From assembly GCF_033153115.1 (NCBI RefSeq), contig NW_026889763.1:17360001-17424000 (forward strand): 64,000 bases of DNA, written 5' to 3'. How positions within the stretch are numbered: position 1 is the first letter of the stretch; every line of letters begins with the position of its first letter. The position numbers and the translations under genes are program-made. This document shows, one piece after another, positions 31,401 to 40,400 of this stretch. This DNA is from Saccostrea echinata (taxonomy: Eukaryota). The notes under the pieces were generated by a model. It saw only the letters and a program-made list of their open reading frames with translations. It made no database searches and had not been told where the DNA came from.

Positions 31401-34400
31401 GTTAATGCACTTGACTGACAGAGGTACACAGATTAGGTATTTTTGAAGGCGGTGCTTATAATCTCTGCCTTTAAGGACATCTACAACTTCTGTTTGTAGT
31501 CAAATCTGGGAGTTCCATGCCTTATTAGCAAAGATCTAATCTACACTTTATACAAAAATTCACTTCATATGGTCTTCACCTCATAACTTTAAATTTATGT
31601 TTTATTAGATTACATGTCTACACCGCAAGAAACTTATTTTTCGGCTTCTAGTTATTTATGTGGCGGCCGCCAGATAAGTTTCTGGTCGCCGCCAGTTATT
31701 TATGTGGTGACCACAGGAAAACTATTTGGCAGCCGCCAGATATATTTTTCTAGCGGCCGCCGAATAATTATGTGGCGGCCGGCAGATAAAATATTTTTCT
31801 TACCTTGCATCTACAATGTACTGGCTTACGTAGCAATATGATGCTTTTAAATAATTTTTTTTATTTATGTATGTATATAAAGTTGCATTTATTTTTTAGT
31901 CATTTTTATTTCAAAACATTTTATTTAGTTTCAATTTTATGATATTAAGGTATATTTTTATAAAACATGTAGTTGTATAACCTCATTGATGAAAATATAT
32001 TGCATATATACCTGTATATGACGTTTTTACGTTTACCTATCTCATGTCTACATATCTTTTCATTTGCATTTTTCGTATGGGAAAATGATAAACATTGATT
32101 ATAATGTTTATGTATAAACTGTTGATTAATTATGATGTTAAACTTTCTATATATGTTCACGTTTAATAAGTTCAATTCATCCTCTTTTAAAGAAAAGTAA
32201 CATTTAACACACCAGAAAAATATCGCACTTTAATAAAACGTTCGCATAAGATAAATACCATTTTCCGTAAAAAAAATTGCTGAAATTGGTTAATTTATGT
32301 CTTTATTCATATCTATCCTATTTCATTTCCGATTCTGACGGTTAAAAAAATCCACTTTCCCCTATCAAAATGTCTACTCCAAAAATATACGAAAGGGGGT
32401 ATACTTAAATATTCAATTATCAAGTGACCGGAAAATGCGTAACATAAATTATTTTCATATTTTTAGGAAGATAAGGAGTTTTTCTACAAAATATCAAAAT
32501 TTCATAAAATTTCGTGAGGGGTCGAAAAACTGTCTTATCGAAACTCCCCCTTTAGAAAGCCTGCATTATATTAAAGAGAGGATCTTTTTTATTTTTAAAT
32601 AAACATCAATGCTTCAACAAATATCATACAACAAAAAGTTTTCCTTAAAATTACGATTGAAAAAAAAAAAAACAGGCCTGACAATTAATACATGAAAAGC
32701 GTCAGTCAGCATTCGACTATATGATAGATTGTATTTGCTGACAAGGTCATTGTATCGACCTTAGAATTTGCAAATAGTTTGTCTATTAGGTTTTTACAAG
32801 TTAAGAAGCATTTTATACAATGCATTTTTAAAATACATGTAATATTAATATTTATTCATCAACTTATTCACACCTGGGGGACCTAAATCGTATTAAGAAA
32901 CACAATTTCGATAACGAGTCCATTGCTCATTATACATGTAAGAGGAATTATCAAGACGTTCAGTGCTGCAATTAAAGTTTTTTTAATTAATGGTTACTCG
33001 TATTACAGGTGTGGGTTCCAACCCTAAGACTCTATAAAACAAGGACCTCCCAATTCTACTTTTGTCTTCAATCACCATAATTCCATAACTCAGTTCCATT
33101 TTTGGTCAAGTTCATAGAAAACTAATTAAATTATTCCAAATAAAAAATAGTAGGAATTACACGCTGAATAATCAGATTTATCCCTAAAAGATAAATACAG
33201 TTATTGAGAATGACGCTTATTGCTTTCTATTTTGAAATTACGTATTGCTTACAAAGAGCAACCCGTTTTCCGGAATTATATGGTCCTATCATGACGATTC
33301 TATGGTTAATAATACATCAGCATTAATGAGCATGCGCTAGGTCTTTTCAACTCCCCATCTTGTTCAGAGCAGACGAAATCTAATATACTATATATTATGG
33401 CTAATATACCATTGACAACACAGGAAAAAATTTGGAATAATGAGTATATAGATCTTGCTAGGTTATTGCATTTAGATCCAGCTGCTGAAATTCAGCAACT
33501 GCTTGTGTTTGAAGATGGAGAAATTAAAATAAAAAATAAATCTAAGGATAGAAAAATTGCAAACATTTCGGAATGGACTGATTCCTTTTTGATTTATGCT
33601 GCCATCTACTTAAAAAAGTTTCCACAGCACATTCAGGGCATAATAAAGTATATCAGTTCAATAAGGCTAGGGGCTTCTCGGTCTACTACACTAGGGTGGA
33701 GGGATTATGACATTCAGTTTAGACTTAGGCGCTCAAAAAATAGTATGATCAGTTGGGAAAACATTGATGCAGAATTATGGTTGATTTACATGGGTCAGGC
33801 AGCAGTCGCTGAACGCAAGCCTACTTCTAATTTGCACCAGCACAAGCGTTGTTATGATTTCAACTTGAAGGGTTCATGTCTTAAAAAAGATTGTAGATTT
33901 TCACACTCTTGTCTTAAGTGCGGCAAAAACCATCCCTCCATCAACTGTTACAGTAATCAAACCAGCCATAGTACATCAAAAGGGGCTACTCACAATGTCG
34001 GTCGTCAAAACATCAATCCCAATGTGACCCAATCAAGATTTTCAAGGCCATTTCGGCAATAAAGATCCATGCCTTTGGGATCTAGGTTTTACACCAATCA
34101 ATGTTACCACTTTAAACATTTTGTTACAAGATTATCCAGAAAAAACTGAGGCAAATCAACTTTTACATGGGTTTACATTTGGTTTCTCATTGAACTATGA
34201 GGGTCCGCGGGATCCAGTATCTTGTAAAAATATGGTTTCAGCATTAGAGCATAAAGATGAATTGTTAGCTAAACTGAACAAAGAAATTGACCTAGGTCGC
34301 ATAATGGGTCCATTTGATGCCCCCCCATTTCAAAATTTTCATTGCAACCCAATAGGAGTTTTACCTAAAAAACAGGGTGGTTGGAGGTTAATCACCAATT

Positions 34401-37400: not shown

Positions 37401-40400
37401 ACCTGTGGTCAAAATTCAGCCGCTTTGATGGCGGTTGGATTTCATTATGCTTGAAATCCAATTGGCGCAATTTTGACAAGTAACCATTTGCTGAGGGATA
37501 CTGTTGTCTCCAGGTCCCCCAGCTCTGATATGGTTTGTTTAATATTTGTGAATGCTATGCTGCCAAAAGCTTACAAGTGGTAAGATCGGCGCATAGGGCA
37601 TGAACATGCGAGTGGCATGTTAACTGTGAATGTAATTTGTAATAAAAAGCCATGACAGTTCCGCCAATATGAGTTGTATTATTCTTCCAAATTCTACAAG
37701 GTACATTTATGAAGTGTCTTGCATAAGAAAAATTCAAAAGCTGAGGTTATCAACCTTTAATAAAGTGTTCTTATTAGTGTTAGGAATTTCGAAATAATCA
37801 GATTTATCCCTAAAAGATAAATACAGTTATTGAGAATGACGCTTATTGCTTTCTATTTTGAAATTACGTATTGCTTACAAAGAGCAACCCGTTTTCCGGA
37901 ATTATATGGTCCTATCATGACGATTCTATGGTTAATAATACATCAGCATTAATGAGCATGCGCTAGGTCTTTTCAACTCCCCATCTTGTTCAGAGCAGAC
38001 GAAATCCCCTCCCTTCCCTCCCTTAAATATTATGGTTGGTTTGAGTTTTTAAATTTATTAAATAAATGTTTTTGGTTCCTTTTCTGCTGTGTGCTTTCTT
38101 TCAATTTCAGAAATCGTCTTGGCTTATATACTGATGAAGAATACTGTGGACTTCGCTGTGAATGTGATAATCCTGACTGTTTTGTGTTAGCGCAATTTTG
38201 ACAAGTAACCATTTGCTGAGGGATACTGTTGTCTCCAGGTCCCCCAGCTCTGATATGGTTTGTTTAATATTTGTGAATGCTATGCTGCCAAAAGCTTACA
38301 AGTGGTAAGATCGGCGCATAGGGCATGAACATGCGAGTGGCATGTTAACTGTGAATGTAATTTGTAATAAAAAGCCATGACAGTTCCGCCAATATGAGTT
38401 GTATTATTCTTCCAAATTCTACAAGGTACATTTATGAAGTGTCTTGCATAAGAAAAATTCAAAAGCTGAGGTTATCAACCTTTAATAAAGTGTTCTTATT
38501 AGTGTTAGGAATTTCGAAATAATAAAGTATAGTTTTTTCATACAATTTATTTTAGCCGAATACGATTCATTCGTTTATACATGTAATTTGTAACCTTTAA
38601 CGCTAATGTTAACTTGACAGTCATCCCAAAGAACGTACGTAGAATAAAACCTGTCTTTGTATGGTGCCAGAATTCGGTCTTTGTACATGTAACACTACTT
38701 TCGCTGGCCTCTGATTCACATGATTCAGGTATACATATTGAAACTATCAGAAGCAGGAGTTCTCGACTTTCAATTTTTTAATCTATGAATGAAAACGTTG
38801 TTTAAGAAATGATGCAAAACACTATTGAGCAACTGAAAGCAAGTGTACAGTACTCGCAAGAGGTTTTAATGTTGCTCAAAGCACCATTTCTCGCCAGAAA
38901 ACAAACACCACCAGCATGGTACAACAATTAATGAGCAAAAATCTGGCAGACCACCCGTGACATCATGCGCAGCAGCACAGGGTTGCGTCATCTTCATCAA
39001 CGTTCCTCGTCTACAGTATTATCAGTTCATGTTCAAATGCCTACAGACATTACACGACTCATAATAACAGACAAGAATAATGAAGCGAGTGACTCAGATG
39101 ACCTAAAATGGTTGATTTGTATAATTTTGCGTTGGTGTCCTCATTTATTCAGGACACACAGACAAGGCAGTTACAATATGCCATAAATAATTGCACTACT
39201 ATACCGAAAGCGAGAAACCGCAATTGTTTTGATTTTGCTAAAAATGGTCTTTTTTAGTTTTTACATTCATTTTCATTTCTTTTAAACTTAATATGTATTT
39301 TTTTAATTTTAATTTTTTAATTTTTAATTTCAAATAATTAATAGGGATCCTGGGGGCTGAAACTTCTTGAGTAACATTCTATTTTAGCAGAAGTGTAAGC
39401 TCTCCAGGATTTTGGTTTCTTTTAATTAATATATTTTTGTTTTATTTATGTTGCCCTCACCCAATAACAATTACAATACAATTTCAATAACAATTCTGTA
39501 ACAACACAGATCTTTCAATGTAAGTAGGGACTGGCGCAATCACATGCAAGGCTTTTCTTAAACTTCCATTATTACTACAATAAGTGCTTTTTAATAAGAC
39601 TTCTTTGGTTGAAAGTAGTGCTTAATCTTTTTTTCAAATATTTTTTTTTTCTTTTTTCAAAGCAAAAACTTTTTGTTGCAAATTTTCCTTTTCTTTATTA
39701 ATCATTGGACTTTTTATATGTTTTTTTTTATTTACTATGTTTGTGTTATATATGTGTATGTGTGTTTATCATGCTGGACATTTGTAATATATTTGTTTCC
39801 TGTGATCTTTTATCCGTGATCGGTTTAAGAACTTTACAGAGCCCACGATATTTGTTACTGTATTTATGTACAAAATGCCGACTTTAGATAAAATTTACTT
39901 TCTTGCTTACTGACTTACTTATGGTAACTCTACACATATTTTGAATATAACAGAAAAATGAAGGAAATTTGGATTCAGAACGAAGACGATCGTTTTAAGG
40001 CATTATGATGATGAAAAAGGTGGTGATAATGAACAGTGATCGATCTTTAAAAAAAAATAAAAACCTACAAACAATAAAATCTGTCAACAGGGCATTAAAC
40101 AACGACCCCCAGAAATTCTAGAGGTGGGATCAGGTGTCTAGGAGGAGTAAGCATCCACTGTCGACAGGTCACATCCGTCGTGAGTCCTAGGTATTGATCA
40201 GGTAGACGGAATATTCCGTAGTCAAATATGGTATAAAACAAAGACCCAACATTTGGTATGAAATATGTAAGTCAAAATACGATCCAATGATAGATTGTAT
40301 ATGCTATTATAGTCATTATAACGACCATAGAATTTACTAAACGCTTATTTAAACAAAGTTATTGAAATCCCTGTAACTTGTTTATCAGAAGTTTAAAAAT

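What the first reader, a model, noticed from the sequence alone, without database searches (positions are those of the whole stretch)
33167..38523. Young, ORF-intact Ngaro retrotransposon combining RT, tyrosine recombinase and an SGNH esterase
Seen: four uninterrupted frames with catalytic motifs (YLDD; RNase H D/E/D/D; YR R-K-HxxR-W-Y; SGNH blocks) and split repeats with no differences by eye, in a window where nearly every other element is decayed. Known: DIRS-order elements lack DDE integrase and are thought to insert a circular cDNA using the YR; split direct repeats define the Ngaro group. Inferred: this is a recently active family, so a candidate self-contained RNA-to-circular-DNA-to-recombinase integration system that could be tested experimentally.
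Basis: partly seen in the sequence, partly recalled or inferred. Interest (0 to 1): 0.82.

Follow-up and report, generated by a model that had tools for sequence, protein, structure and literature searches.

The report
Young oyster Ngaro retrotransposon, 5'-deleted copy
This is a real, recently inserted copy of a known kind of jumping gene (a Ngaro-type retrotransposon with a tyrosine recombinase and an esterase gene) in an oyster genome. This copy has lost its front end. The main new detail is that the family makes its esterase from a spliced message fused to the start of its first gene.

Summary
Window 33167-38523 has the Ngaro layout A1-ORFs-B1-A2-spacer-B2, with A1=A2 (214 nt) and B1=B2 (334 nt) identical. 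It has four open frames: zinc-finger ORF1, RT/RNase H, tyrosine recombinase and an SGNH esterase.

Its genome holds at least seven other full-length copies, six of them 99.4-99.8% identical and one about 98.8%. All are 6.0 kb.

The window copy lacks 667 bp right after A1, replaced by an 18-nt filler. That removes the 5' UTR, the ORF1 start and 134 codons, and a splice donor. It is therefore not intact or self-contained.

ORF4 has no start codon. Public contigs from two studies join ORF1 codon 120 to window 36720 through a GT-AG intron, in frame. The joined form is absent from the genome DNA. NCBI gene models in three oyster species show the same fusion.

RT + recombinase + SGNH is already described for Ngaro elements. 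In this genome more than 100 further SGNH ORFs exist, and 8 of 8 sampled sit behind gag-RT-YR.

The scan had already noted the spliced Gag-SGNH idea on other DNA of this genome (s1-816137).

Verdict: a new member of a known kind, of moderate interest.

The parts
33167..33380 (+). Repeat A1 (214 nt). It begins with AATAAT (33167-33172), which holds the shared TAA core.
   Evidence: Identical to A2. All 16 insertions compared start ..TAATCAG, apart from a mutated base in each of two older copies.
33381..33398 (+). 18-nt filler at a deletion scar. It replaces 667 bp present in every other full-length copy: 263 nt of 5' UTR plus the first 404 nt of ORF1, including the splice donor.
   Evidence: BLAST layout of the window copy against L002-L008 and the sequence of L003:834-1500. 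Contigs from X1-X3 continue with the canonical sequence before 33399 (table 7).
33397..34062 (+). Truncated ORF1 (221 aa; the canonical protein is 355 aa). It keeps the folded core and the CCCH and CCHC-like zinc fingers. It lacks the N-terminal region that is modelled only at low confidence.
   Evidence: In the AlphaFold model of the canonical ORF1, residues 1-133 have pLDDT below 50 and residues 138-270 have pLDDT 80-96. Homologues are C3H1-type proteins of bivalves.
34028..35683 (+). ORF2, reverse transcriptase plus RNase H (551 codons stop-to-stop). It is in the +1 frame relative to ORF1 and overlaps it by 32 nt. The first ATG is at 34229.
   Evidence: Pfam RVT_1 E=1.5e-16 and RVT_3 E=0.031. 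The YLDD motif is present. 741 homologues were found, including named proteins of Pinctada, Pecten and Saccostrea.
35557..36561 (+). ORF3, tyrosine recombinase (334 codons stop-to-stop). Its first ATG is at 35611 and it overlaps the end of ORF2 by 127 nt.
   Evidence: Pfam Phage_integrase E=5.7e-9 and the SAM-like N-terminal domain E=0.006. The R..K..HxxR..W..Y motifs are visible in the translation.
36680..37312 (+). ORF4, SGNH/GDSL esterase. It has no ATG before the catalytic Ser. The 3' splice site AG is at 36718-36719 and exon 2 starts at 36720.
   Evidence: Pfam PF00657 scores 24.5 bits against a cutoff of 23.6. The AlphaFold model (pLDDT 74.5) matches SGNH esterases at Foldseek E about 1e-7. 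Loose ends in contigs from X1 and X6 join canonical ORF1 sequence to 36718.
37465..37798 (+). Repeat B1 (334 nt). It holds an AATAAA at 37759-37764. Its last 6 nt, AATAAT, are also the first 6 nt of A2, forming the internal copy of the joined termini.
37793..38006 (+). Repeat A2 (214 nt).
   Evidence: 214/214 identical to A1.
38007..38189 (+). Unique spacer between A2 and B2 (183 nt).
   Evidence: It is present in all full-length copies and in the solo A-spacer-B remnants.
38190..38523 (+). Repeat B2 (334 nt). It has an AATAAA at 38484-38489, and the element ends ..TTTCGAAATAAT.
   Evidence: Identical to B1. Right junctions of 16 insertions were compared.

Best explanation
The window holds a recently inserted but 5'-deleted, non-autonomous copy of a young Ngaro-type (DIRS order) tyrosine-recombinase retrotransposon family of the oyster Saccostrea (most likely S. 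echinata).

Shown here:
- The canonical element is 6,006 bp: A1, 5' UTR, ORF1 (355 aa zinc-finger 'gag-like' protein), ORF2 (RT/RNase H), ORF3 (YR), ORF4 (SGNH esterase), B1, A2, 183-nt spacer, B2.
- Public contig sets hold the element but not its left flank, and the right flank appears in one run only. The family therefore appears to be transcribed.
- ORF4 is joined to ORF1 by a GT-AG intron. The intron runs from ORF1 codon 120 to just before the catalytic GSS motif and skips the rest of ORF1, RT and YR. The product is a 317-aa protein: the N-terminal 120 residues of ORF1 plus the esterase.
- All insertions share the trinucleotide TAA at both ends and at the internal B1|A2 junction.

Inferred from published DIRS/Ngaro models:
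- Transcription starts in A1 and ends after the AATAAA in B2.
- The internal B1|A2 copy serves as the template that restores the termini in the cDNA.
- The YR recombines the joined termini with a TAA-containing, AATAAT-like target.

Inferred with low confidence:
- Because Gag and the esterase share the same N-terminal region, the esterase is brought into the same ribonucleoprotein. There it may help assembly or trafficking at membranes, as proposed for the esterase of CR1/L2 LINE ORF1 proteins.

The window copy lost 667 bp after insertion. The filler partly repeats the sequence next to it, which looks like an end-joining scar. The copy can no longer make full-length ORF1 or the esterase fusion.
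For: - Anatomy and domains.
- Family: at least 7 other full-length copies of 6.0 kb with different flanks. Pairwise divergence is 0.23-0.56% among seven copies; L008 is about 1.2% from the rest. Older relatives are 78-97% identical.
- Deletion. The window copy is the only one of the 17 copies covering that region that lacks the donor site.
- Splice in contigs: contig ends in X1 and X6 (two studies) carry canonical ORF1 sequence directly before 36718. The boundaries are CAG|GTATGC ... TTGTAG|ATTC, and the frame is kept.
- Splice not in DNA: a 30-nt junction pattern has 0 hits in the 923-Mb genome with up to 2 mismatches.
- Gene models: NCBI or EukProt models P0001 (S. echinata, 317 aa), P0002 (S. 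cucullata isoform X2) and P0005 (C. gigas isoform X2) switch from ORF1 to SGNH at the same residue. The full ORF1 homologues P0141 and P0143 continue instead with G-T....
- Esterase conservation: the block I Ser and the block V Asp are invariant in 10 sequences down to 44% identity (Mytilus); the block V His is kept in 9 of 10.
- Wider family: more than 100 further SGNH ORFs in the genome. 8 of 8 sampled lie right after gag-RT-YR. 5 of 7 have no Met before the catalytic motif, and all 7 have a pyrimidine-rich AG 9-20 nt upstream.
- Termini: 16 insertions compared.
- Host: contig C25 is 29,015,514 bp, the same length as the contig recorded for S. echinata LOC133191937.
Against: - All four runs were available only as assembled contigs. 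Their RNA or DNA nature is a guess by the tool, so transcription and splicing rest on indirect arguments: flanks mostly uncovered, junction absent from the assembly, and gene models.
- No read data cover the window-specific deletion scar or the left flank, so the deletion has not been checked against raw reads.
- dN/dS for ORF4 against older copies is 0.67-0.77, versus about 0.28 for RT and YR against the older L014 (0.35-0.48 against L012). Counts are small and the comparison copies are dead, so purifying selection on ORF4 inside this family is not demonstrated.
- RT phylogeny against reference Ngaro, DIRS and PAT sequences, and comparison with Repbase or Dfam, could not be done.
- Two of the 16 insertions have 7-nt flanking direct repeats that a simple YR exchange does not explain.
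Confidence: 0.85

Rival explanations
1. One reading: this copy is an intact, autonomous element that encodes everything needed for RNA-to-DNA-to-recombinase integration.
For: ORF2, ORF3 and ORF4 frames are open at full length. A1/A2 and B1/B2 are identical. The truncated ORF1 keeps an ATG, the folded core and the zinc fingers.
Against: - 667 bp present in all seven other full-length copies are missing. They include the 5' UTR, 134 codons of ORF1 and the only donor for ORF4 expression.
- ORF4 has no start codon of its own.
- No second copy with this deletion exists in the genome, so the deleted form has not spread.
- All six private substitutions of this copy are absent from the contigs of four public runs.
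Confidence: 0.04
2. The 5' deletion is an assembly artefact and the real locus holds a full 6.0-kb copy.
For: No read or contig from the four runs covers 33000-33398. Near-identical multi-copy repeats are hard to assemble.
Against: - The junction carries an 18-nt filler that partly duplicates the sequence next to it. That is typical of end-joining repair and not of a collapse.
- The rest of the copy has its own six private substitutions and unique flanks.
- The A and B repeats are resolved correctly.
Confidence: 0.07
3. The ORF1-ORF4 junction is not a real splice (a chimeric contig or an annotation artefact), and ORF4 is translated another way or is a dead passenger.
For: - Only contigs were available, not reads.
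- Gene-model pipelines can invent introns to rescue frames.
- ORF4 dN/dS is high (0.67-0.77).
Against: - The same junction occurs in two independent studies (X1, X6). It has canonical GT-AG ends, a pyrimidine-rich tract and a preserved frame.
- It is absent from the genomic DNA.
- The same switch point is seen in three oyster species whose N-terminal sequences have diverged.
- Donor and acceptor are conserved in all young copies.
- Acceptor-like sites are found in families only 30-45% identical.
- Catalytic residues are conserved out to Mytilus.
Confidence: 0.05

Closest known systems
[quoted passage not shown]
   Same: Four ORFs in the order gag-like, RT/RH, YR, SGNH hydrolase. Split direct repeats A1 ... 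B1 A2 B2 that can be 100% identical. No methyltransferase domain.
   Different: The host is a bivalve mollusc, not a vertebrate. In Xenopus all ORFs are reported to overlap. Here ORF4 lies 118 nt after ORF3, has no ATG, and is joined by splicing to the first 120 codons of ORF1. A 183-nt unique spacer separates A2 from B2.
DIRS-1 of Dictyostelium (PMC7192593)
   Same: It has RT/RH plus a tyrosine recombinase and an internal copy of the joined termini. A short species-specific trinucleotide is shared by the termini and the target; here it is TAA.
   Different: DIRS-1 has inverted terminal repeats with an internal complementary region and a methyltransferase domain. This element has direct split repeats, no inverted repeats and an esterase instead.
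Esterase domain of ZfL2-1 ORF1p and other CR1/L2/RTEX LINE esterases (PDB 4c1b; PMC3905857)
   Same: An SGNH esterase encoded by a retrotransposon and attached to the element's nucleic-acid-binding or assembly protein. It is proposed to act at membranes.
   Different: It belongs to a different retroelement class and sits at a different gene position. Identity is only 21%, and it ranks 49th in the fold search, no closer than bacterial and yeast SGNH esterases. That is consistent with independent capture.
GDSL ORF3 of bdelloid rotifer Vesta LTR retrotransposons and Athena elements (PMC5408684)
   Same: An extra 3' ORF encoding a GDSL/SGNH enzyme with intact catalytic residues. The paper states that such ORF3s are typically expressed from spliced messages.
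   Different: Those are LTR or Penelope-like elements with other integration enzymes. No fusion to the Gag N-terminus is described there.

Membership tests
Ngaro group (DIRS order, tyrosine-recombinase retrotransposons) | Encodes reverse transcriptase plus RNase H | tested here: met
   Pfam RVT_1 E=1.5e-16 and RVT_3 E=0.031. The YLDD and D/E/D/D motifs are visible in the translation.
Ngaro group (DIRS order, tyrosine-recombinase retrotransposons) | Tyrosine recombinase instead of DDE integrase; no aspartic protease | tested here: met
   Pfam Phage_integrase E=5.7e-9. No rve or protease family was found in any ORF. The R, K, HxxR, W and Y motifs are present.
Ngaro group (DIRS order, tyrosine-recombinase retrotransposons) | Split direct repeats A1-[ORFs]-B1-A2-B2 | tested here: met
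   A is 214/214 and B is 334/334 identical, in that order. The B1 end and A2 start overlap in AATAAT. The same layout occurs in seven other copies.
Ngaro group (DIRS order, tyrosine-recombinase retrotransposons) | No methyltransferase domain (this separates Ngaro from DIRS-like and PAT-like) | tested here: met
   ORF2 ends about 30 residues after the RNase H motifs, and ORF3 (YR) overlaps it. No further Pfam domain was found and no coding space is left over. Absence is judged by space and Pfam only.
Ngaro group (DIRS order, tyrosine-recombinase retrotransposons) | RT/RH sequence falls in the Ngaro clade of a phylogeny with reference elements | not tested
   No reference Ngaro, DIRS, PAT or VIPER sequences, and no Repbase or Dfam, are reachable with these tools. 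The protein hits carry no TE names.
Ngaro group (DIRS order, tyrosine-recombinase retrotransposons) | Insertion flanked by a short sequence shared with the joined termini rather than a fixed-length target duplication | tested here: inconclusive
   TAA is present at both ends in all 16 insertions, allowing for two mutated old copies. However, 2 of the 16 also show a 7-nt direct repeat of flanking DNA.
DIRS-like (DIRS-1 type) | Inverted terminal repeats plus an internal complementary region | tested here: not met
   No inverted repeat pairs of 30 nt or more were found in 32000-40000.
SGNH/GDSL hydrolase superfamily (ORF4) | Conserved blocks I (Ser nucleophile), II (Gly), III (GxND) and V (DxxH) | tested here: met
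   VGSS, WKG, GGND and DGVH are present. The block I Ser and block V Asp are invariant, and the block V His nearly so, across 10 homologues down to 44% identity.
SGNH/GDSL hydrolase superfamily (ORF4) | Profile score above the curated threshold, and the SGNH fold | tested here: met
   PF00657 scores 24.5 bits against a cutoff of 23.6, so it barely passes. The AlphaFold2 model has pLDDT 74.5. 164 PDB chains match at E<=0.001, and the named ones are SGNH/GDSL esterases or acyltransferases, with some designed scaffolds among them.
SGNH/GDSL hydrolase superfamily (ORF4) | Esterase activity | not testable with these tools
   This needs a recombinant protein assay.
Autonomous (complete) member of its own family | Full length and all coding and expression signals of the canonical 6,006-bp element | tested here: not met
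   667 bp are missing after A1. These cover the 5' UTR, the ORF1 start and 134 codons, and the splice donor.

The most novel reading that the evidence does not exclude
In a large, old and diverse clade of bivalve Ngaro elements, the SGNH esterase is a standard fourth gene. It is made from a spliced subgenomic mRNA as a fusion to the N-terminal region of Gag, in the way retroviruses make Env. This would be the first documented spliced accessory protein in the DIRS order, with the shared N-terminus acting as the tag that brings the enzyme into the element's particle.
Probability: 0.45. Interest if true: 0.55.

Novelty: new member of a known kind. Interest (0 to 1): 0.4.

Why it matters
Tyrosine-recombinase retrotransposons are the least understood order of retroelements, and the role of their extra enzymes (methyltransferase, hydrolase) is unknown. 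This oyster family is young, multi-copy and apparently transcribed. That makes it a usable natural system for observing how a Ngaro element expresses its genes.

The spliced Gag-N-terminus/esterase fusion gives a concrete, testable idea of how the esterase is made and targeted. It is conserved from Saccostrea to Crassostrea, and acceptor-like sites occur in families only 30-45% identical.

For genome annotation, the result explains a class of 'uncharacterized protein, isoform X2' gene models in oyster RefSeq as transposon products.

The window copy itself is an ordinary defective insertion.

Tried and rejected
- Empty-site search with both flanks in the own genome. The left flank is unique. 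The right flank is an old dispersed repeat with 44 weak matches. No paralogous empty site was found.
- Insertion polymorphism and assembly check with reads. All runs are contig-only and do not cover the left flank or the scar.
- The 'goes back 725' joint in X3 is the B1/B2 repeat folded by the assembler. It is not a circle junction.
- dN/dS of each ORF against older copies L014 and L012. The comparison copies are dead, so the values mix selection and decay. ORF4 gives 0.67-0.77 on small counts, which is not decisive.
- PDB sequence search. The YR gave no hit at E<=0.1. The SGNH fusion gave one marginal hit at E<=1.
- ORF1 fold search. Foldseek found nothing at E<=0.001, and the best VIA-align score was Z 4.9 among unrelated helical proteins. 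No capsid-like relative is shown, so 'gag-like' rests on position and zinc fingers only.
- The bacterial promoter/terminator scan is irrelevant for an animal genome.
- Rfam found no family in 32500-39200.
- The Poulter and Butler 2015 review is not held. Literature searches found no description of splicing in Ngaro elements, but the founding 2004/2005 papers are not in the library.

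
Full report
**What is at the coordinates**

Window 33167-38523 (+ strand) has the layout A1 (33167-33380), coding region, B1 (37465-37798), A2 (37793-38006), a 183-nt unique spacer, and B2 (38190-38523).
- A1 and A2 are identical over 214 nt, and B1 and B2 over 334 nt. The repeat tool's 300-nt family starts three bases early and includes one mismatch at 37464.
- The end of B1 and the start of A2 overlap in AATAAT. The same hexamer starts the element and ends it.
- No inverted repeats of 30 nt or more are present.

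Four frames are open on the + strand:
- ORF1, 33397-34062, 221 aa
- ORF2, 34028-35683, 551 codons stop-to-stop
- ORF3, 35557-36561, 334 codons
- ORF4, 36680-37312, 210 codons

In the 24 kb around the element, only two other ORFs reach 110 aa. At 35% G+C, frames this long cannot be chance.

Pfam gives RVT_1 (E=1.5e-16) and a weak RNase H-like match for ORF2. It gives Phage_integrase (E=5.7e-9) plus a SAM-like N-terminal domain for ORF3, and Lipase_GDSL (24.5 bits, cutoff 23.6) for ORF4. ORF1 has no match.

ORF1 carries a CCCH finger followed by a CCHC-like knuckle.

**The family, and what is wrong with this copy**

A DNA search of the window's own genome (923 Mb, 425 contigs) found 66 matching places.
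- Seven other full-length copies have unrelated flanks (L002-L008).
- All are 5,965-6,006 bp, not 5,357 bp.
- Each carries 667 bp between the end of A1 and the base matching window 33399. In the window copy an 18-nt filler (33381-33398) stands there instead.

In the canonical copies this stretch holds about 263 nt of 5' UTR. It also holds the ORF1 start codon (L003:1097) and the first 134 codons of a 355-aa ORF1. The ATG of the window's ORF1 is formed by the filler. The filler partly repeats the sequence just downstream, which looks like an end-joining repair scar. That reading is an inference.

No second copy with this deletion exists, so the deleted form has not spread.

An AlphaFold2 model of the canonical ORF1 (28-sequence alignment) gives pLDDT below 50 for residues 1-133. 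Residues 138-270 form a confident helical core, followed by the zinc fingers. The window ORF1 therefore keeps the folded part and lacks only the N-terminal region that is modelled at low confidence.

**Age**

- Pairwise divergence among seven full-length copies (window copy included) is 0.23-0.56%. L008 is about 1.2% from the rest.
- Older relatives are 97% (L012), 88% (L014) and 78-83% identical. The lineage has therefore been active over a long time.
- Once the filler is set aside, the window copy has six private substitutions: one synonymous, S>N in ORF2, V>E and S>L in ORF3, N>K in ORF4, and one non-coding. The ORF4 position is N in all nine aligned homologues.
- Its repeat pairs show 0 differences in 548 nt. 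About one would be expected at the private-substitution rate, so this is consistent.
- The insertion is young, but I cannot give years without an oyster mutation rate.

**State of the eight full-length copies (description only)**

- Three keep all four frames open at canonical length.
- Two have ORF2 split into two frames.
- One has ORF3 split.
- One (L008) has many breaks.
- The window copy has the 5' deletion.

**How the esterase is expressed**

ORF4 has no Met before its catalytic Ser. ORF3 ends at 36561 and the ORF4 frame opens only at 36680.

When public runs were laid on the window, contigs from X1 and X6 (two different studies) matched from 36718 onward. Just before that point they carried sequence that is not in the window (table 7). 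That sequence is the canonical ORF1 sequence ending at L003:1455.

Resolving the two ambiguous bases gives exon 1 ...CAGCCAG | GTATGC... and ...TTGTAG | ATTCAATC for exon 2. This is a GT-AG intron with a pyrimidine-rich tract.

Exon 1 holds 361 coding nt. The split codon becomes GAT, and the reading continues D-S-I-W-I-V-G-S-S in the ORF4 frame. The product is 120 residues of the ORF1 N-terminus plus the esterase, 317 aa in total.

A 30-nt pattern across the junction has no match in the genome with up to two mismatches. The joined form is therefore not a DNA copy.

Independent support comes from gene models.
- The best hit of ORF4 is S. echinata LOC133191937 (P0001, 317 aa), which has exactly this architecture.
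- S. cucullata 'isoform X2' (P0002) and C. gigas 'isoform X2' (P0005, 70% identical) switch from ORF1 to esterase at the same residue.
- The full-length ORF1 homologues P0141 and P0143 continue with G-T... at that point.
- Donor and acceptor are unchanged in all young copies. The window copy is the only one of the 17 copies covering that region that lacks the donor.

In all four runs the element is covered but the left flank is not, and the right flank is covered only in X1. The six private bases of the window copy are all replaced by the family's common base. These contigs therefore come from other copies, most simply as RNA. The tool labels the run types only as guesses, so transcription is likely rather than proven.

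**The esterase is a standard gene of this clade, not a one-off cargo**

- A search of the genome with P0001 gave 125 scored matches out of 627 candidates. About 90 were esterase-only matches at 31-49% identity, starting at residues 106-125 for nearly all full-length matches, i.e. at or near the exon-2 start. Most had open frames of about 205-220 aa.
- I fetched eight of these (L039-L046). In all eight the esterase lies directly downstream of ORF1-, RT/RH- and YR-like sequences in the same order.
- In five of the seven where the catalytic motif could be located, the frame opens only 8-16 codons upstream, with no Met. All seven have a pyrimidine-rich ...AG 9-20 nt upstream of the W codon. Two have a TACTAAC-like branch site. 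AG dinucleotides are common, so this is consistent with conserved splicing but not proof of it.
- Mytilus proteins at 44% identity keep the block I Ser and the block V Asp and His. One Mytilus gene model joins an RT fragment to the esterase just before the equivalent V-W-I-V-G-S-S motif.
- The AlphaFold2 model of ORF4 (pLDDT 74.5) matches many SGNH esterases at E about 1e-7, including yeast isoamyl-acetate esterase, bacterial sialate O-acetylesterases and TesA. The LINE esterase 4c1b appears only at rank 49 with 21% identity. The fold is confirmed, but the substrate and the donor lineage are not.

**Termini and target**

I compared junctions of 16 independent insertions. These were eight full-length copies, three A-internal-B forms, one copy interrupted by an insertion, and four solo A-spacer-B remnants.
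- The left end always reads ..TAAT-CAG, apart from one mutated base in each of two older copies (L012, L029). The two bases before it vary: AA in 8 cases and other pairs in the rest.
- The right end always reads CGA-AATAA followed by T (12 cases) or C (4 cases).
- The strictly shared sequence is therefore TAA, inside a preferred AATAAT-like target.

It fits the published idea that DIRS-order elements share a species-specific trinucleotide between the joined termini and the target (PMC7192593).

Two insertions (L004, L029) also have a 7-nt direct repeat of flanking DNA, which I cannot explain.

The A-internal-B and solo A-spacer-B forms are what recombination between the two A copies, the two B copies, or the three core sites would leave behind.

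**Mechanism: shown and inferred**

Shown:
- the anatomy
- the multi-copy young family
- the deletion in this copy
- the splice junction and its conservation
- the shared TAA

Inferred from the DIRS/Ngaro models summarised in PMC7192593, PMC6681497 and PMC9210276:
- The transcript starts in A1 and ends after the AATAAA in B2.
- Reverse transcription uses the internal B1|A2 copy to restore complete ends.
- The YR recombines the joined ends with a TAA target.

DIRS-1 work found mostly linear single-stranded cDNA (PMC7192593), so the circular double-stranded intermediate remains a model.

The role of the esterase is unknown. My best guess, at about 0.3, is that the shared N-terminal region brings it into the ORF1 ribonucleoprotein. 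There it would act on membrane lipids or acetylated glycans during assembly or trafficking, as proposed for LINE ORF1 esterases (PMC3905857).

**Comparison with what is known, and novelty**

[quoted passage not shown] Both cite Goodwin and Poulter 2004.
- Ngaro elements are reported in bivalves at low copy number (PMC10294476).
- GDSL/SGNH genes also occur in LINEs and in rotifer LTR and Penelope-like elements (PMC3905857, PMC5408684).

What I did not find in the searchable literature is the spliced Gag-N-terminus/esterase fusion, or the size and diversity of the esterase-bearing clade in an oyster. The founding papers are not in the library, and Repbase and Dfam could not be consulted.

The scan itself had already noted the splice idea on another piece of this genome (s1-816137) and the missing ATG on this window (s1-807571). 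I tested both here.

**Limits and rules followed**

- Reads were available only as contigs.
- The choice of a copy for a mobilisation assay is referred.

Noticed in passing
L004 (G000:C1:34810619-34815743) and L029 (G000:C40:1944633-1945338), junctions: Two of the 16 insertions have a 7-nt direct repeat of flanking DNA just outside the TAA core (CTATAGT and CGTATGA). Both have C instead of T after the right-end AATAA. The L004 site reads as an 18-nt palindrome around TTAA. A simple tyrosine-recombinase exchange does not predict such duplications.
   Followed up: partly
L009, L010, L012 (A-internal-B) and L024, L025, L029, L030 (solo A-spacer-B, about 729 bp): Two recurrent short forms end exactly at the core sites. 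They are the products expected from recombination between A1 and A2, between B1 and B2, or between the three TAA cores. One solo (L024) is 99.7% identical to the young family, so such events happen quickly.
   Followed up: partly
Whole genome G000; sampled loci L039-L046: More than 100 further SGNH ORFs are 31-49% identical to ORF4, many with open frames of about 205-220 aa. All eight sampled lie directly after gag-, RT/RH- and YR-like sequences. Esterase-bearing Ngaro-type elements are therefore a large and diverse clade in this oyster.
   Followed up: partly
Proteins P0036 and P0150 (Pecten maximus LOC117322521, isoforms X1 and X2): RefSeq models in a scallop treat a related element as one gene whose isoforms are the RT protein and the gag-like protein. 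Many 'uncharacterized protein' models in bivalve annotations are products of these elements.
   Followed up: no
L003:1097-2161 (canonical ORF1), residues 138-270: The confidently modelled helical core of ORF1 has no convincing relative among solved structures (no Foldseek match at E<=0.001; best VIA-align Z 4.9). The label 'gag-like' rests on gene position and zinc fingers only.
   Followed up: yes
L015/L017 (G000:C57:8190446-8195915) and L016/L018 (G000:C2:715196-720666): Two copies on different contigs share the same internal insertion of about 350 bp at the same element position and have the same identity values. They are probably one insertion present twice through a segmental duplication or an uncollapsed haplotype.
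   Followed up: no
window 38524-38923: The right flank of the element belongs to an old dispersed repeat, with 44 genome matches at 65-86% identity starting 5-8 nt from the junction. The left flank (32767-33166) is unique.
   Followed up: partly
window 36694-37029 (- strand): A 111-aa ORF lies antisense to ORF4 and has no Pfam match. It is probably a shadow of the coding strand.
   Followed up: partly
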